Positions 13,852 through 49,500 of a DNA stretch of 64,000 nucleotides are shown one piece after another. Positions within the stretch are counted from its first letter, which is position 1, and each line of letters opens with the position of its first letter. The position numbers and the translations under genes are program-made. The notes under the pieces were generated by a model. That model was not told the origin of the DNA, did not search any database, and saw only the letters and a program-made list of their open reading frames with translations. The DNA is from Styela clava (Eukaryota): contig NC_135250.1 in assembly GCF_964204865.1 (NCBI RefSeq), positions 10,912,001 to 10,976,000 of the forward strand. The letters are read 5' to 3'.

Positions 13852-14442
13852 CATCAAAAATTTAGTCTCACGAACTATGTGATTAACTACGCTAAAATTA
13901 GCTATCAGTAGTTCACCTGTAAGCGGCACGTGGTTAGATAATTTTTTAAATAAAAATGATGGTTTCAAAATGTTTAGGCATAGGGAGAGTGTTTTAAGGT
14001 GTATCGCATACTGAAGCAGGGAGTCCAGGGAAGCCATATGGTAACGGTAGGCTACTCTGACATACTACACAGGCACTATTTCGTGTCAGTATATTTGAGC
14101 ATCGCTGTCTTGTTAGTTGATCAGTGGAGGAACGCTATGACTTTTATAGTACAACTGATGTTGTCTTCCTGATGATGACGTGTAGAAATATATATATATA
14201 TATATATAATTATTTTAGCATTATGAGTAATGCCGTATAGGCAGTTGGCAACGAGTCTTTGTGCCGACGAACCAGAATCGGCTATCAAGAACTATTGTTT
14301 TGATTGCTATTATTTACACTGCATTCGAAATTGTCACGTTACAGTTAGAAGGCCGGTCATCATTTCAAAAATTTGTAAGATTTGCTCGGAAACGTAACGA
14401 CAACAGCTGTTATATTTTTGCATTTATTGTTTTATTCTAGGT

Positions 14443-16024
14443 TTATTCAAAAATTTCAAATACATCCAATTCTCTGTCATCCTCATCATTATCTTCTAAA
14501 TATCGGAATCGTCTTCGTCGTGACACATCTGTAACAGGGGTTTAAAGAATTAAAGAATTTGCGTACCATAAGCTACGTCTTGCAACAAATTGTTCGCATT
14601 CAGAAAAAACATTGGGACCCCCTGAAGTATGCGCACCAACATGGCGCACAACCTGAACTCAGGTTGTGTACCAGGATAGGGTTCAGGTCATGCGACATCT
14701 TGGTGCGCATACTTCAGGAGTATCAAACCTTGTTATCATTTTACCTAAAGGTATCAAAATTTATCGTTATTATTTTCTGAATTTTACTCAGATTCTATCT
14801 TGTAACGTAAAGTATATATATGAAACGCGGTAGGTATAGACTGGCAACGAACATGAGTTAGCAGCAATTCACTATATCACAAGATACATCTTTTCACAGG
14901 AATAAGTGTGAAGTCTTGTGCTATTCTAGCATGTGAAAAATGTATATGTAATATACTCAACGGTTTCATGAACCTTATATACATATATTCCTAAATTAGA
15001 TTAGCAAAAATAAGCTGGCCGTGTAAAGTATGTTCCCAAATAATCATTTTTGAGTTGGGATTGAACCCAAGTAGAACATATTCTGATAAATTCACTTTAG
15101 CTTGTACACATGAATTGTTTTTATCTTTTAAAAACAAAACTCCGGCTAACCATAGGCGACTGCAGAAGATTTTTGAAATCTATTCAATGTTCTAAATCCG
15201 GGAGTGGTAGAGATCGTAGAAATTGTTTGTCCATTGGTGTATTCATTTCTGTTTATATAAATGTAAATTTTTTATATATATAGATTATAGATTATGTTTG
15301 TTGAAAATGAAGGCTGCCAAAGACTTAAACTGATGTCGGAAAAATATGGACTGCATTATTCCAGTGTCCATCGATGCGCGACTGAGAACGAGTTGAGTAA
15401 ACACGGTTGGGCAAATGACGCAATATAGCCAGTGAATGCCTGCTGACGGCGATTTAATGTCAAAGCTTCATTTCTGCCCAATGATGCAAATGGTCAGTCA
15501 GTTAGAGCAATTGTTCATCAAGAAAGTCTAAAAACTTTGCAGTTCTATTATATACTCTTATTATCAAATTTTTTCATTAACGTTACGTGACCGCATAAAA
15601 TCTGTTTATTTTGGGTACCTGAATAATTGTTGCTAAAACGATGAGCCTACTACCAAATTGTATGTAATAATGGGCGAATTTTGAGACGAAAACGCGACAG
15701 TACGGAACATCGCATTTGCCGATTGATTTTTTGTTCGATTAGGAAATACTGAGAAATCATTTTTACATTCGAAAAATATATCTTTGCCTGCATTGTTCTG
15801 CTATCTTATTTTGCATGTTTCACATTCATTAAATCAAAAATTGGGCCATTGCGATTGGAGTAACAAGCGGTAAAAACAAATAATATATCTGTAGTTGCAA
15901 ACATCTTGAAATTACATCTTACTTTCATACGACAAAAGATGTTTAGTAAAAGTAATAAATTAAATACTTACCCAGTTACAGCGAGAAGAACAAAAATTAC
16001 TATAATCACGAGATATCGATTCAT
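14443..16024 (-). CDS. Small secreted prepropeptide C (3 exons, 78 aa), host-defence-peptide-like precursor
   Basis: Exons 16024-15972, 15248-15151, 14528-14443 (GT-AG, phases 2,1). MNRYLVIIVIFVLLAVTGNEYTNG-QTISTISTTPGFRTLNRFQKSSAVAY-DVSRRRRFR-YLEDNDEDDRELDVFEIFE*. AATAAA directly after the stop (14431-14436). Paralogue with identical structure at 16997-20356. Confidence 0.8.
14619..14720. mobile_element. ~100-bp palindromic MITE, copy 2 (intron 2 of prepropeptide C)
   Basis: CCTGAAGTATGCGCACCAA...TTGGTGCGCATACTTCAGG inverted arms. Confidence 0.85.
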
Positions 16025-16996
16025 AGTTTACCCAAACTACAAAAAAGGAACAAAGACAATCAAATGGATTTGTAGTTTTAAACTCATTCTAATCACGTTC
16101 TAGAAATTAGCAAGCTAGTCGATAGCAAGAGTGCAATGCTCAAGAATATAGACAGTAATGCCAAATGGCTAATCTGAAAATCGCAATATTATCAAAATTC
16201 CAGCCAAATGATAAAGGAATTGTACTGAATGTTAAATGAGGGTGCTCGAATGAATTAACGAAAAATAGAAACTTTATATATTTATAGATTAGAAATGTTC
16301 GCCAAAATTACTAATCTCTGGGCTATCGGGCTTCCCAGAATCAAGAGAAACTTTGAGAATAAATTAAAAGATTATCATGCTGAAATCGATACGTCCTTTA
16401 GTTGTGGAGGAGAGCAATTTTCCACAAAACCAACAATTTGCCCAAACAATTCATAGGTCTTCGTTATTCACTTCGTGTTCAATAACACTTCTGTAATCTA
16501 TTCTAACGTTACTGCTTGGCACAATCTAAATTTCACAACTTCAGTTTTCTTTGCACATTAGCACTGACAAAGAACTCGTTTACTTAATGACTTTGAAAAG
16601 AATAAGGGGAAGCTCAACCATATGGCACTGATGCTCATAAATCTATGATGACCGTTAACCGCCTCTACATTGTATTTACGGAAGTCGGAATCATTACGAG
16701 CAAAGATTGACTTTCTGGCTACATTATTTGTTTGGCACAGGTAATCACTACGATAAAGAAAAAACGTAGAAGTTTCACGTGTTCACAAATTTCATCAAGT
16801 TATATTTGTACAAAACACTCTCACTTTAAAATTTTCATTTTTGTATTATGATGACACATGATAACAATTCAAAAAGCTAATCTTAACAATGAGTGAAAAT
16901 TTTCCTTTTTTGCCTGCTAATATTCAAGCAGTAAGTATGTCGAAATATACCATTTTGGAAATATCAATATATCCCATATATATCTAGTTGAAAATA

Positions 16997-19900
16997 TTAA
17001 TCAAACAATTCCTCGAGATCAAGCTCATCATTATCATCATCATAGTCTGCATTTCGTATTCGCCTAACATCTGTAAAAAGATTGAAGTCAAGGAAGTTCA
17101 TATCTTGTTTTAATGGGAATTTGTAAATTTTTCGACATGCAGTGTACTTTGTATCTGGACAAAACGGTTAGTATAAAAAATATTTCCGCATTAAAATTAA
17201 AACCATTCCATATCACGAAATCCCGAACAAGTTTTCGAACAAACATATGTAAACCACTGGATACAGAGCAAGTTTCTTAATAATATTGAGGTGAATTGCT
17301 TCAAGATTCACGTCAACGGATATTTATAATGTTGCTTAGGAAACCACCATAGTGCTAGGCGGTTTCAGTAGCTCAGTAGCATTTCAAGTGTGACACTGTG
17401 GTCAAAGTTTATTCTACTTCATTCTGAATCCTCGAAACCTTGGATGCTTTAAACCAGGGGTGTGCAATCTTTTTTACAGATGGGCCAAATACAAGTAACT
17501 GGGTGAAGCCGCGGGCCGCACCAAGAAAGTCTACTTACGAAAAATTTGTAGTTTTTAATTGGTATTTCTTTGTTATTTTATTTTACCATGTGTGCCCTCA
17601 AAAATTACTTACTTGCGAATGAGTTTCCCTAATTTAAACGAAATTAATTTGTTCCAAGCCTCTTCGTAGATAGAAAATTCCGTGGGTAAGGACGCATGAA
17701 TAAAAAGGGATTAATCCATTCCAAGCTCCCACAAAACCCGGACATAATATTTACTAGGGCAACTAGGCTAAGCGAAGACCGTGGAGAGTGGGAAAACGGG
17801 GGTCGGACGAGGTGAAAGGAGGCGTTAAAAGTAGAAATCTGAAAGAGAACGTAATGTACGAAAATGAGCACACGCACATGAATATCAAAATTAATATTTA
17901 CTATTTTTATTTTGCATTTTTATTTATTTTTATTATTTCATTTATTTTAGCTTTGACTGTTATGCGTATCATCGTCATCTCAACTGAAACTGAGTGAGAC
18001 TTATTGTACGTACCCGCGGGAAACAAACGGGCAAGTGGGATGGAAGATGGTTGATTGGCGTGTGGCAGGGCAGCTACCGCCGACTTCGATTTTTATGTAG
18101 CTCACGAGTCACGACACCATTCGTTGATTCAGGAAAAACGCAAATGTATTCACGCGATCATCGTCATTGCCAAATGAGTGAATCTGATTCCCAAATTCCC
18201 ATCTACCAACAAAAGAGAATTAAGACCGGACATCTTCTTTTATTTTTCGAGTCGGCGCTGATTTAAATATTTTATTTAGGCTGTTTTGAATTTATTTTTT
18301 AATATTAATTAATACCGCCAACTTAAACTGAACGATATTATCACGCCGCGATAGATACTAAATAATATTTAGGAGCTATTTTATAAGCTCTAAACTGCAA
18401 GAGATGAAAATTTGCCCTTATGTTTGGACACTATCAAAGTGAAAGGATGAAAACAATTACAATTTACAAACATAATTTTCTTTCAGATTTATTGTCGATG
18501 CCGCACAAACTATCTCGACAAAAAATGAAACGAGATAGCGATCAGAGACCGCCAACTTATCGATCTTCAGCATGTTCCGTTAGGGGATCCCCCAAAACAG
18601 AAACCGTGGGTTCGATTTCTTCGCTCTGACTCAATAGCGACACTGCGTGTCCCATTACTAATTAATTAATAATTCGCTAATTATACCATATAATTCATCC
18701 AAAAACACTGGGCTTCTGGTCCGCGATATGATAAATGCACGATCGATAAGCAATATTAGTAAAGTGTTCCAAATCAAAACGTTTACGGTCGCTCTAGGAA
18801 TTTGGTATTCTAACAGACACGTAAAACTATATTCGAATTGGACATCCCTGATTCAAGCTCTGCATTAAAAAAAACGAATGTCCCTACACGCGTTTTTTGT
18901 CTTTCGTATGTAAAAAATCTCATGTTATAGTAGAAGCAATGTTATTGCAAAAATAATTTTTGTAAGTTGGATTTTTCGTATCCCGAGCCTTTCGTAAATA
19001 GAGTCTTTACTGTAGTTGCAGACACAAAAATTTGTTTCTTTTTGTTATCGATCTTACGGCATTGTTCGGGGTCCTGGCAAAAATGTTGAGTTGAAACGTA
19101 AATTTTTTTAAATAAAACTGTTTAAATTTATTGTCACAGCGACCTAATCGAATTTAGCAAGAAACACGCGTTTATGACATTGTGTATTTTCCAACAAAAT
19201 ATTGCCTGCTGGTTTTACTTATATGATAGTGGCACTCGGGTACTTGAATGGGTTCCGCGACGCAAGAGGTTGATTCGCTCACACGTTCTAGAATGATAAA
19301 ACTAAAAGCTCGTTTCGCGGGAACATCCTCCAAAATTAGCATTTCTCCGCGGGACGCACAATTCTTTTTTGCGGGCCGCATTTGGCCCGCGGGCCGCAGT
19401 TTGCACACCCCTGCTTTAAACAATGTGACATAAATTAAAGGCCAATGTGTTTAAAACTAAGCTATTCAGAACTTATTGGAAGTTTGCATCGTACAAAAAT
19501 TTTACTCAACAATGGTACATTACCCCACGCCGCTGAAGATGGGGTTGTTCTCACATATCTTCTTAATCCTGATATGGATGAGGTTGTCAAAATGGTTTTT
19601 CCATTCACACATTTGTTTCTGAATGTATAAATTCAAAGTACTGTATGTGTAATAAATATTAGGTGTAAAAATTTTCGTCGTATCACAAGCAAATGTGGAT
19701 ATATGTACATAGTAAAGAAGAAGGACAGGGATTTATTTTTAGTTGTGAAATGAGAGTCGTGTTGATGTTAGGAATTTATGATCAGCGTACACATTTCTGT
19801 AAAAAAAATACTATTTTATTTTGTAGTTTTCCAACATCCTCATAATTTTTTGTCACTTGTTTCTGTGATCCACTTTTGTATAAGCAAACTTTTAAAGCTT

Positions 19901-20356
19901 TTAAACTTTTGGTTAAAAGCCAAAGATCTGTCTGCTCGGATGCTTCACACCAGTGGAGGGTATTTGTACCCATGATATAGAACAGATGATTTTATTCGTT
20001 CTGAAACAGGAAGGATCCTGAATTTGACAACAGCTGAACATAGTTGCAAATGATTGTAACTGTAAATGAAGGAGATTAGCATAAGTTTTAGATGGTCTCC
20101 TCTTAACGGAATGTATAGTTATTTAATACATGTTGCAGATGATCCACATAATTGACGCCAGCCCAAGGTAATCGAAAAAAGTTTTTCGACGACGACGCAT
20201 GTCTAATGAACTGTAACCATTTTTCAGAAATACAATATGAACGGGAATAAGTCAAATAGTACAGAAGCAAGCATGTGATATCAAGAAACGAAATACTCAC
20301 CCCGATCCAACGAGGAATACAAGAATAAACACAACCGAGAAAGATCTGCTTGTCAT
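16997..20356 (-). CDS. Small secreted prepropeptide D (3 exons, 74 aa), host-defence-peptide-like precursor
   Basis: Exons 20356-20301, 19618-19524, 17070-16997 (GT-AG, phases 2,1). MTSRSFSVVFILVFLVGSGNKCVNG-KTILTTSSISGLRRYVRTTPSSAAW-DVRRIR-NADYDDDNDELDLEELFD*. Confidence 0.8.
17455..19413. mobile_element. Non-autonomous hAT (Charlie-like) transposon in intron 2 of prepropeptide D
   Basis: TIR CAGGGGTGTGCAA/TTGCACACCCCTG; perfect 8-bp TSD CTTTAAAC (17447-17454 and 19414-19421); subterminal GCGGGCCGCA repeats. Confidence 0.93.
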
Positions 20357-46535: not shown

Positions 46536-49500
46536 ATGAATTATACGAAAGTAGGGCTCACTATAGTTGCTATTCTGGACGTAGTTGTTGTTTTAGTGTT
46601 GTATTATACTACGTTAACAACGGTCAGTGTGTATGATTATACAAAGGATACAAAAGTGGAATTCGATTCATTATATTTTTCAAATGTAACGGAGGAAAAT
46701 CATTCTATTGAACCTAATAATTTATTTAAGACCTCAAAGTTTCTGGGAGATATTAGCAGAAATGCTACAGTTTCAACGCATTCAACACTTCCAATTCCAA
46801 AACAAAAATATGTATTGGACCAATTTATTGGAAACACGAACTATTCTATCATTGGATATAACGGATCAAGAGTATACAATACAAGTAAACACAACAATAA
46901 TACAGGAAAATTTTGCATGGAAAAACCACCTCGTCTAGTTGGAAAAATGGCTATTCCAAATAACATTCTCCCTCCATCGTGGGAGGAAATTCGGAAGCAA
47001 AATTTGAATATACACGGCGGAAGTTATATGCCTGAAAACTGTAAAGCGAGATATAAAATCGCTATAATAATAGCCTTACGAGGCAGAGAGGACCAATTGA
47101 AAATTCTCCTCTATCATTTGCATCCGATTTTACAAAGACAGCAAGTCGATTATACTATATACACTATCACTATGGCCGGAAAAGGCGTTTTCAACAGAGC
47201 TAAACTTATGAATGTGGGATTCGCGGAGGCAAATAGAGGTAAACTATTTTCAGTTTTGCTCTGGGTGAAGATTTACTAAAAAGCATTTAACTTATGACAA
47301 AGTACATCATAATGGTAATGGTCATTTTGTTAATACGCTTTGCCTGTGGTTTTTGGGTACATGTGTTTTCAACGATAAGACCGAAACAACCACAACATTT
47401 GCTGGTAGATAATATATATATATGGTAGGCTGTTACAAATTAGCAATATATACCGGTAGATATCGGGTTTTCAAATTCCGTAACATCGCCAAGAGCATTT
47501 TGCGAATGTGTGGAAAGAACCAGAAAATGTTACATAAATTGACATGCTATGTTCTTTGCCAGTGTTCATTTGGTCAGTAATTCTCGTTTTTTATTAAGAC
47601 CGAAAATACGATTGCTATATATTCCATGACGTGGATTTACTATTGGAAGACGATAATTGTTTATATTGGTGTTCGAAAGAGCCAAGAGAACTCGCTCCCT
47701 ACATGGATAAATTTGGGTATAAACCCTTGTCTTACTCACTCGGTTGCCGTTCAAGTAATGGTGAGTAGCATAGCTTTTCAGCATAAACTTTAATTATAGG
47801 GATATTCTGCTTAAGAAGAGGTAATTACCAAAAATTACCAGTTCATATTATTGTTCTATTTTATTGTGTCTATACAATAATAATTTAGAGATTAATCTTA
47901 TTCACGGCATTGGTTGACCCGATACTGATTTTTGGAATTTTAATCGCGAGTTCCAGTTTAAATCAGTAGTTTGAAAATCTAGAAAATAAGTGGTAATATA
48001 TTTGTGGTTGTTTTTGGCACATTTTGAGCTTTTTTAAAGTACCGAATACCGAATTCTTTTTACCGAATTGTTTAATATTTCAAATTCAAGATATGGTAAA
48101 CGCGCATAGTCTGAAGTTACTAATCTAATAAATCCAGTCCATTTTTCGTTTTTTTTTAATCTTTCATATATAACATAAAACGAATCAAGCTTTTGTGAGA
48201 TAGCCATGGTCCTTCAGACGGTATTGTCATTTTAAAGTTAGCTCTGTCTATTCCGGGCAAATGCATGAATATTTCTTGTCTTTTTGGACAGGACCTATGT
48301 GTACCTATCGATCGTTTTATCATTAGTATCTTGTTGTTGGTATGTCGTGAAAAATCACTTTTCTCTTTACTAGACCAATTGCTTTAAAATTTTCAGTCGA
48401 TAAATTGTTTGCTGTATGATTCTGTTCATTATTTTTGTCGCTACAAGGCTATTACTTTTATCTATTTTAAAAAAATCTGTGGATTCTATGGGATTCGTTT
48501 TTCGTGTGTCATCATCAAAATCAAAAATTGCGCACCTTGTGGTAATTCTGCGTTCTCGTTCTTTGTGATTTGGTTGTCAGTCCAAGTCGGGAAGAATACG
48601 GTACCGTACGTGTCATGTCTATATATTTAAGCATTACTTCCGTGTTTCTTTTGTTTTGATTTTATCGTGCCTATTTCCCTGGCAAACAATTTAATTTGAT
48701 CTACCTATAGTATCGACAAAATTACCGTCACTTTCAGAAGAAAACGCACATGAGTTGTACTGTAGGATGTTGTGTAAAACCCTCCGGAGTTTATGGGGAT
48801 TAATTCCATTCATTGACGTCTAAAAATTACAATGATCCCTTTTTGCCCAATTATAGTTGTCATTCCGGGATAGGAGATACCTTCATAGGTGCCATTTCAA
48901 AATATTTACTCATTTAAAACAATATATTGCAATTTAGACTAACGATCATTTTAGAAAAATTGTCTCCATAAACTAATAGATTTCTAGAGCACTGATACAT
49001 ACAACTGTGAAAGCGATTGAATTTCTGTATTAGAGTAATTTTGAAGCCGTTTGTTTCATTCCAGCGCCACGGATAAACAAGTACTTTGGCGGAGTCGTTC
49101 AGGTTTCGCACGAACTTTTCCTTGAAGTGAATGGTTTTTCTAACATATTTTGGGGTTGGGGAGGTGAGGATGATGATATGTATTCAAGATTGTGGAGTAA
49201 AGGTAAGGACGTGGACTCAGTTTTATTTCATTTTAGTGTATTTTGAATGGATTTGCAAAACTTGAAAAATATTTGGATCTGAGAAAAATATCTGAAACTA
49301 TGAGAATAAGTCAAAAGTCGAAATGATCCCATACATACAAGATGCAATACAAGTAGGATACTGCAAAAAAATAACTTTTATATAGCTAACTCAATATACA
49401 TATACAGCCAATGTACTATGCATATATGTGGTAACTAATTATCTTATCCCAGGATGATTGGCAAGAGTTCGATAAACTCGTGAACCGACTGTGACTCGTA

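What the first reader, a model, noticed from the sequence alone, without database searches (positions are those of the whole stretch)
14443..20356. Hidden pair of small prepropeptide genes with cationic core and polyanionic tail: candidate new host-defence or bioactive peptide family
Seen in sequence: two tandem minus-strand 3-exon genes (78 and 74 aa) missed by the ORF track, with identical intron phases (2,1) and one module per exon. Exon 1 is the signal peptide. Exon 2 is NxxxNG followed by an acid-free, Ser/Thr-rich cationic core (QTISTISTTPGFRTLNRFQKSSAVAY, +3; KTILTTSSISGLRRYVRTTPSSAAW, +4). Exon 3 is DV, an RxxR polybasic site (RRRRFR / RRIR) and a tail with 10 acidic residues. Established: signal + cationic peptide + anionic C-terminal extension is the precursor layout of ascidian antimicrobial peptides (styelins, clavanins, Ciona MAM/PAP families). 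Inference: these cores resemble none of those mature peptides that I recall, so they may be a new family; a neuropeptide or hormone role is also possible.
Basis: partly seen in the sequence, partly recalled or inferred. Interest (0 to 1): 0.85.

Follow-up and report, generated by a model that had tools for sequence, protein, structure and literature searches.

The report
Orphan secreted propeptide gene pair
The sea squirt Styela clava carries two neighbouring, apparently unannotated three-exon genes for tiny secreted precursors (signal, Ser/Thr-rich basic middle, basic cleavage site, very acidic tail); they look like real genes with no detectable relatives, but their expression and any antimicrobial role remain untested.

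Summary
Two minus-strand three-exon models (78 and 74 aa) have GT-AG introns, phases 2 and 1, and one module per exon. They are true old paralogues. Similarity is confined to the three exon pairs, all length differences are multiples of three, and dN/dS is about 0.54.

The genome is Styela clava. Two clavanin genes lie about 350 kb away on the same contig.

No relative of the pair turned up in the own genome, in Pfam, or in the two large protein libraries. A clavanin control of the same size was found, so size does not explain the blank.

The precursor layout matches styelin-type precursors. The cores, however, are polar (31-36% hydrophobic), not significantly amphipathic, and lack the amidation glycine. 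After trimming, copy A's product has a net charge of only +1. They are not clavanin family members, and they lack styelin hallmarks. The antimicrobial reading is possible but unsupported.

The scan noted this same stretch once more. It also found analogous families, not demonstrably homologous, elsewhere in this genome. I rebuilt one of them: it shares the three-exon, phase 2,1, signal/core/acidic-tail plan.

The parts
15972..16024 (-). Gene A exon 1: ATG (16024-16022) plus an 18-aa signal peptide. It ends with 2 nt of the Gly codon (phase 2). Donor GTAAGT.
15151..15248 (-). Gene A exon 2: NEYTNG plus a 26-aa Ser/Thr-rich acid-free core (+3) ending in Tyr. Phase 1 donor GTTAGC.
14443..14528 (-). 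Gene A exon 3: DV, the basic cluster SRRRRFR, a 19-aa tail with 10 acidic residues, and stop TAA (14445-14443).
14423..14436 (-). Two AATAAA polyadenylation hexamers, 7 and 15 nt after the stop of gene A.
20301..20356 (-). Gene B exon 1: ATG (20356-20354) plus a 19-aa signal peptide. Phase 2 donor GTGAGT.
19524..19618 (-). Gene B exon 2: NKCVNG plus a 25-aa Ser/Thr-rich acid-free core (+4) ending in Trp. Phase 1 donor GTAATG.
16997..17070 (-). Gene B exon 3: DV, the basic cluster RRIR, an 18-aa tail with 10 acidic residues, and stop TAA (16999-16997). No canonical AATAAA or ATTAAA within 400 nt downstream.
14604..14738 (.). Palindromic MITE inside intron 2 of gene A (arms 14621-14658 and 14681-14718). 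It has more than 1000 candidate copies in the genome. It is not part of the gene's function.
17448..19420 (.). About 2 kb insertion with 23-nt terminal inverted repeats and TTTAAA flanks inside intron 2 of gene B. It explains why this intron is 2453 nt against 622 nt in A.

Best explanation
These are two old tandem paralogues of a Styela clava-restricted gene for a small secreted pro-protein, each with three exons and one module per exon. Inferred mechanism: exon 1 drives ER entry, and the signal peptide is cut at the exon 1/2 junction (AVTG|N and VGSG|N). In the secretory pathway a furin or prohormone-convertase-type enzyme cuts at the conserved basic cluster just after the conserved SSA-A-[Y/W]-DV motif. 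This releases a 33-35-aa polar, Ser/Thr-rich, weakly to moderately basic N-peptide and an 18-19-aa polyacidic C-peptide. The C-peptide balances the charge of the basic part up to that point; both pro-proteins are net -3. The N-peptide is the likelier active product. It is probably an extracellular or granule peptide of the host-defence type, but not a lytic amphipathic helix like the clavanins or styelins. It may be O-glycosylated or otherwise modified. Shown: gene models, paralogy, coding constraint, absence of detectable relatives. Inferred: transcription, signal cleavage, convertase cleavage, function.
For: Exact models with canonical splice sites and identical phases. Similarity between the copies is limited to the three exon pairs (z = 4.8-6.2). 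All indels are frame-preserving. Third codon positions diverge most (identity 0.49 against 0.60 and 0.67), and dN/dS = 0.54, with Fisher p = 0.024. There are hydrophobic N-termini with small residues at -3 and -1, and in-frame stops upstream of both ATGs. Gene A has two AATAAA hexamers right after its stop. Both copies conserve a basic cluster and an acidic tail with 10 acidic residues, and both have a net pro-protein charge of -3. The host genome makes known peptides from precursors of the same size and with similar gene structure: clavanin genes rebuilt here have 3 exons with phases 2 and 1, and match UniProt Clavanin-D at 78 of 80 residues across both junctions. A second orphan family on the same contig shows the same plan of signal, core and acidic tail with phases 2 and 1. 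Styelin precursors have the same linear layout (PMC8659048).
Against: No protein like either copy exists in the 1.84 billion representatives or in the 5.8 billion clusters, although S. clava RefSeq and UniProt proteins, including the 80-aa clavanins, are in that library. Gene B lacks a canonical poly(A) signal. dN/dS is only moderately below 1, from 73 codons. The basic site in B (RRIR) is a minimal furin motif. No orthologue from another species could be examined.
Confidence: 0.55

Rival explanations
1. Classical cationic antimicrobial peptides, the reader's favoured reading: the exon-2 core is a membrane-active AMP kept inactive by the acidic tail until cleavage.
For: The layout equals that of styelin precursors. 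The host is the source species of clavanins and styelins. Clavanin genes lie about 350 kb away on the same contig. Intelectin genes are neighbours (notes only). Core and tail balance in charge.
Against: The N-product is polar (31-36% hydrophobic, about 30% Ser/Thr). Its net charge is only +1 in A after trimming. The helical hydrophobic moment of 0.46-0.47 is not above shuffles. The predicted fold is a low-confidence hairpin with a central Pro-Gly or Ser-Gly. There is no amidation glycine. Signal, core and tail are about equally conserved (dN/dS 0.43-0.73 per exon), instead of the conserved-propiece and hypervariable-core pattern usual for AMP families.
Confidence: 0.2
2. Neuropeptide or hormone precursors: one bioactive peptide followed by a basic site and an acidic C-terminal flanking peptide, as in NPY-type prohormones (my own knowledge of that layout).
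For: The same linear layout. A conserved N-terminus (N-x3-N-G-x-T-I) and a conserved C-terminal end of the core (SSA-A-aromatic), as expected for a receptor ligand.
Against: No amidation signal and no paired Cys. No relative in any other animal, whereas most chordate neuropeptide families are at least conserved among ascidians. Tandem duplication with 55% amino-acid divergence is more typical of effector genes.
Confidence: 0.12
3. An unprocessed small secreted acidic or O-glycosylated protein, for example a tunic or mucus component or a cation-binding protein. The basic cluster is not a cleavage site.
For: The Ser/Thr-Pro-rich stretch is typical of mucin-type O-glycosylation sites (inference). 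The whole pro-protein is net -3 with a polyacidic end. B's site RRIR is only a minimal motif.
Against: Both copies keep the basic cluster at the same place, directly after a conserved motif. Proteins this short with a sharp basic/acidic split are usually cleaved.
Confidence: 0.13
4. Not functional today: untranscribed or decaying relics of a once-active pair, or a chance model.
For: No expression evidence. No database entry, although S. clava RefSeq is in the library. B has no canonical poly(A) signal. Mobile elements sit in both second introns.
Against: Chance is excluded by the exon-restricted paralogy. Both copies keep open frames, start, stop and all eight splice dinucleotides despite synonymous divergence of about 0.95. 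Indels are multiples of three.
Confidence: 0.12
5. Precursors of small, heavily modified aromatic peptides of the DOPA or bromo-Trp kind. This was suggested by the scan's other note on this stretch, because both cores end in Tyr or Trp at the exon boundary.
For: The aromatic residue at the end of exon 2 is confirmed in both copies. Styela haemocytes do make such modifications on styelin D.
Against: No cleavage motif lies directly after the aromatic residue (it is followed by DV). Nothing links these sequences to plicatamide or tunichrome-type products. Untestable here.
Confidence: 0.04

Closest known systems
Styelins (Styela clava; precursors described by Zhao et al. 1997, as summarised in PMC8659048)
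   Same: Same species. The precursor is of the same size (about 80 aa) with the same order: signal (22 aa), basic peptide (31-32 aa), acidic C-terminal propiece (26 aa).
   Different: Styelins are Phe-rich, alpha-helical and C-terminally amidated through a Gly donor. A and B have polar Ser/Thr-rich cores, no Gly donor and a polybasic RxxR-type site instead. No styelin sequence was available by reference, so sequence similarity was not tested directly.
Clavanins and clavaspirin (Pfam PF05452, Styela clava)
   Same: 80-aa secreted precursors with an acidic C-terminal extension. The genes are on the same contig about 350 kb away, with three exons and intron phases 2 and 1, as in A and B.
   Different: There is no sequence similarity (z <= 2.1 for the full proteins, about 0 without the signal peptide) and no PF05452 hit in the window. 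In clavanin genes, exon 2 is a 20-nt micro-exon, and the propiece, the His/Phe-rich mature peptide, Gly and the tail all lie in exon 3. Clavanins also have an N-terminal anionic propiece and amidation.
Orphan Trp/Tyr/Arg/Lys-rich three-exon peptide family on the same contig (scan note s1-817480; region G000:C1:27733001-27777000)
   Same: Four members rebuilt here have exon 1 as signal, exon 2 as basic core, and exon 3 as an acidic tail ending in F-x-F-E. Phases are 2 and 1, and the proteins are about 70-80 aa.
   Different: Tail similarity to A and B is not above composition-matched shuffles (z <= 2.1). The cores are unrelated in composition. That family has no polybasic cluster.
Prohormones with a C-terminal acidic flanking peptide (NPY/CPON type; my own knowledge)
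   Same: Signal, then one peptide of about 35 aa, then a basic cleavage site, then an acidic C-terminal peptide.
   Different: Those carry a Gly-Lys-Arg amidation and cleavage site and are conserved across phyla. A and B have neither.

Membership tests
Clavanin family (Pfam PF05452) | Match to the family profile over its cut-off (21 bits) | tested here: not met
   The PF05452 scan of the whole genome hits only C1:10538311-10538484 and C1:10574701-10574874, and nothing in the window. Pfam scans of the four A and B exon peptides return nothing even at E <= 10.
Clavanin family (Pfam PF05452) | Pairwise similarity of precursors | tested here: not met
   Global alignment gives z of 1.1-2.1 for the full proteins, and -0.5 to -0.1 without the signal peptide. 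The A-B pair gives 11.7 and the clavanin pair 33.
Clavanin family (Pfam PF05452) | His/Phe-rich 23-aa amphipathic helix followed by a Gly amidation donor | tested here: not met
   The A and B cores contain no His, are 35-40% Ser/Thr, and have no Gly before the basic site. For clavanin features.
Clavanin family (Pfam PF05452) | Gene structure: 3 exons, intron phases 2 and 1 | tested here: met
   Clavanin genes rebuilt from L018 and L019 have exons of 47, 20 and 176 nt and are validated against Clavanin-D (78 of 80 identical). The phases match A and B, but the modules are divided among the exons differently.
Styelins | Layout: signal, about 32-aa basic peptide, C-terminal acidic propiece, about 81 aa in total | tested here: met
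   A and B: 18-19 aa signal, 37-41 aa up to the end of the basic site, 18-19 aa acidic tail. For styelins: PMC8659048.
Styelins | Phe-rich alpha-helical mature peptide with a Gly amidation signal | tested here: not met
   No Gly donor. The helical hydrophobic moment is not above shuffles. The fold prediction gives no helix, at pLDDT 54.
Styelins | Sequence similarity to styelin precursors | not tested
   No styelin sequence could be obtained by reference; the tables in the papers held no letters. Indirectly, phmmer with A exon 2 against 1.84 billion representatives found no styelin.
Convertase-processed secreted propeptides (generic kind) | N-terminal signal peptide with small residues at -3 and -1 | tested here: met
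   A has the n-region MNR, a 13-residue hydrophobic core and AVTG|N. B has MTSR, a hydrophobic core and VGSG|N. This was read by rule; no SignalP was available.
Convertase-processed secreted propeptides (generic kind) | Conserved R-x-x-R or dibasic site between modules | tested here: met
   RRRR and RRFR in A, RRIR in B, seven residues between DV and a conserved Tyr in both. Actual cleavage is not testable with these tools.
Cationic amphipathic AMPs (generic kind) | Net charge of +2 or more, about 40-50% hydrophobic residues, significant amphipathicity | tested here: inconclusive
   B's product is +4, but A's is +1 after trimming. Hydrophobic content is 31-36%. The moment is 0.46-0.47, p = 0.06 and 0.13 against shuffles.
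Expressed gene | Spliced transcripts across the four junctions | not testable with these tools

The most novel reading that the evidence does not exclude
A and B are a divergent branch of a large, fast-evolving Styela superfamily of three-exon (phase 2, 1) secreted peptide genes. The superfamily would also include the clavanins and several orphan cationic-core/acidic-tail families. Only the gene architecture and the acidic, Phe-Glu-ended tail would have survived divergence. A and B would make a new, non-helical, possibly O-glycosylated class of host-defence peptide released by a convertase.
Probability: 0.2. Interest if true: 0.6.

Novelty: new member of a known kind. Interest (0 to 1): 0.4.

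Why it matters
If expressed, the pair adds an unannotated, taxon-restricted peptide family to the species from which clavanins and styelins were first isolated. Together with the other hidden families the scan noted in this genome, it suggests the ascidian repertoire of small secreted peptides is much larger than the annotation shows. It also gives a concrete case for asking whether unrelated-looking peptide genes share an ancestral three-exon scaffold. On its own, without expression or activity data, it is a modest find.

Tried and rejected

3. More family members in the own genome: exon peptides, two-row profiles and degenerate DNA patterns found only A and B. The one extra pattern hit each (L005, L008) is at the chance level. 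L005 has stops right after the match; L008 was not inspected.

4. Outside relatives: phmmer with A exon 2 gave only two bacterial repeat proteins that share a TISTTPGFR-like word by chance. The word-index search with B's exon-2 open frame gave nothing. The ESM Atlas best score was 0.78, below any useful level.

5. A mitochondrial cox1 gene to type the organism: absent from the assembly. The species was settled instead by B4GalT and the clavanins.

6. An alternate haplotig for allelic comparison: none. Only the intronic MITE is repeated.

7. Homology of the acidic tails to the other orphan family: rejected, z <= 2.1.

8. Pfam scans of 18 neighbouring ORFs of 90 aa or more found only the B4GalT N-terminal domain (and one sub-threshold match), so A and B do not visibly sit inside another gene.

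They were built from coordinates only, inside local scripts. It was redone from references.

10. The structure of exon 2 alone was too uncertain to use (pLDDT 54).


Full report
OBSERVATION

- Gene A has exons 16024-15972, 15248-15151 and 14528-14443 (53, 98 and 86 nt; 78 aa).
- Gene B has exons 20356-20301, 19618-19524 and 17070-16997 (56, 95 and 74 nt; 74 aa).
- All four introns are GT-AG, with good donors and pyrimidine-rich acceptors. Phases are 2 and 1 in both genes.
- Each ATG has A at -3 and an in-frame stop two or three codons upstream, so the frames cannot be extended upstream.
- One module sits in each exon. Exon 1 is a hydrophobic signal with small residues at -3 and -1 exactly at the junction. 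Exon 2 holds N-x3-N-G and an acid-free Ser/Thr-rich core (+3 and +4). Exon 3 holds DV, a basic cluster and a tail with 10 acidic residues.

IS IT MORE THAN CHANCE?

Yes. Several lines agree.

- The joined proteins align with z = 11.9.
- An unbiased tblastn of each protein against the whole 64-kb window returns the other copy's exon 2 and exon 3 as the best non-self hits, colinear and on the same strand.
- At the DNA level, the best hit between the two loci is the exon 2 pair, and the exon 1/donor pair ranks third; the other hits are short and look like chance.
- Each exon pair exceeds random intron or flank pairs (z = 4.8, 6.2 and 6.0), while the 5' and 3' flanks do not.
- Exon length differences are 3, 3 and 12 nt.
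- Identity is lowest at third codon positions (0.49 against 0.60 and 0.67).
- dN = 0.51 and dS = 0.95, giving dN/dS = 0.54 (Fisher p = 0.024).

The pair is therefore an old duplication that has been kept open and spliceable. The constraint is modest, and similar across signal, core and tail.

WHOSE GENOME

- An intronless stretch of a B4GalT gene in the window is 94% identical to a Styela clava protein.
- Clavanin A, taken from the text of PMC4904370, finds two loci on the same contig. These are the only full matches to Pfam PF05452 in the genome.
- I rebuilt both clavanin genes. They have three exons of 47, 20 and 176 nt, with phases 2 and 1.
- The models match UniProt Clavanin-D at 78 and 76 of 80 residues, with no mismatch around either splice junction.

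The genome is therefore S. clava. The A/B pair lies about 340-390 kb from the clavanin genes.

RELATIVES

None were found.

- In the own genome (377 Mb), exon peptides, two-row profiles and degenerate patterns return only A and B.
- Pfam gives nothing.
- phmmer with exon 2 of A against 1.84 billion representatives gives only two bacterial repeat proteins that share one short word.
- The word-index search with B's exon-2 open frame gives nothing.
- As a positive control, the last exon of a clavanin gene does retrieve the 80-aa Clavanin-D and clavaspirin entries. S. clava RefSeq proteins are also in that library. The blank is therefore not due to size, and the genes appear to be unannotated.
- Caveat: a cluster representative only 50-60% identical to A could fall below threshold with a 32-aa query.

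WHAT IT MOST LIKELY IS

The pair most likely encodes small secreted pro-proteins.

- Signal cleavage at the exon 1/2 junction, and convertase cleavage at the conserved basic cluster, are inferred from the sequence rules. Neither is shown.
- The basic part up to the site (+6 and +7) and the tail (-9 and -10) give the same net charge of -3 in both copies. This fits a charge-balanced propiece.
- The layout is that of styelin precursors: a 22-aa signal, a 31-32-aa peptide plus Gly, and a 26-aa C-terminal propiece (PMC8659048).

The lytic-AMP reading is weak, for these reasons.

- After carboxypeptidase trimming, the N-product is +1 in A and +4 in B.
- It is 31-36% hydrophobic and about 30% Ser/Thr.
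- Its helical hydrophobic moment (0.46 and 0.47) is not above shuffles (p = 0.06 and 0.13).
- AlphaFold on the exon-2 alignment gives only a low-confidence hairpin around the conserved Gly (pLDDT 54).
- There is no Gly amidation donor, whereas clavanins and styelins are amidated.
- Conservation is even across the modules, not the conserved-propiece and variable-core pattern.
- The same layout is used by prohormones with acidic flanking peptides (my own knowledge), so layout alone does not decide the function.

COMPARISON WITH OTHER HIDDEN FAMILIES

The scan's notes list several other signal/cationic core/acidic tail families in this genome. Some were followed up as transcribed.

I fetched one of them, on the same contig 16.8 Mb away, and rebuilt four members. 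They have the same plan as A and B:

- exon 1 is the signal, ending in phase 2;
- exon 2 is a basic core, ending in phase 1;
- exon 3 is an acidic tail ending in F-x-F-E.

The tails are not significantly similar to those of A and B once composition is controlled (z <= 2.1). That family also has no polybasic site.

Clavanin genes share the phases but divide the modules among the exons differently. A common three-exon scaffold is thus a lead, not a result.

WHAT COULD NOT BE DONE

- Transcript evidence is missing.
- SignalP and ProP were not available.

VERDICT

It has the general precursor layout of that species' peptides, but it belongs to neither family, and nothing specific points to antimicrobial action.

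Novelty: a new member of a known kind (taxon-restricted secreted propeptide genes). Interest is moderate.

Noticed in passing
window 14604-14738 (arms 14621-14658 and 14681-14718): Palindromic MITE of about 125 nt in intron 2 of gene A. The own-genome DNA search gave 1121 first-look candidates, and the scored copies are 90-96% identical on many contigs, including a tandem-like series at C4:17.80-17.82 Mb.
   Followed up: partly
window 17448-19420: About 2 kb insertion in intron 2 of gene B, with 23-nt terminal inverted repeats (CAGGGGTGTGCAA... ends), GC-rich subterminal GCGGCCCGCGGG motifs and TTTAAA flanks. Its 90-aa ORF (17994-18266) has no Pfam match. It is probably a non-autonomous DNA transposon.
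   Followed up: partly
G000:C1:10537219-10538484 and C1:10573609-10574874 (L019, L018): Two clavanin genes about 36 kb apart, 340-390 kb from the pair. Each has 3 exons of 47, 20 and 176 nt with a 20-nt micro-exon that encodes the end of the signal and the start of the propiece. The encoded proteins differ from Clavanin-D at 2 and 4 of 80 positions.
   Followed up: yes
G000:C10:21158098-21158151 and C1:22047898-22047951: Two further places match only the signal-peptide part (positions 1-18) of the clavanin profile, at 18-19 bits. They may be first exons of other peptide genes that reuse a clavanin-like signal exon.
   Followed up: no
G000:C1:27733001-27777000 (L020-L024): In the Trp/Tyr/Arg/Lys-rich family, exon 2 contains an internal GTAAAT 20 nt after its acceptor. 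An alternative 20-nt exon 2 would therefore keep the frame. This is the same length as the clavanin micro-exon, and may be coincidence.
   Followed up: no
window 46536-47276 (+): Long exon of a beta-1,4-galactosyltransferase gene (Glyco_transf_7N, E = 4.8e-35), only 94% identical to the S. clava RefSeq protein. This suggests high allelic divergence or a recent paralogue.
   Followed up: partly
window 16500-16996: Gene B has no AATAAA or ATTAAA within 400 nt of its stop; only variant hexamers occur. Gene A has two AATAAA hexamers within 20 nt of its stop. B may use a weak signal, have a long 3' UTR or be less expressed.
   Followed up: partly
window 1-29000: Apart from A and B, this stretch has no ORF of 90 aa or more with a Pfam match, so the pair sits in a gene-poor stretch upstream of the intelectin genes noted at 29-35 kb.
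   Followed up: partly
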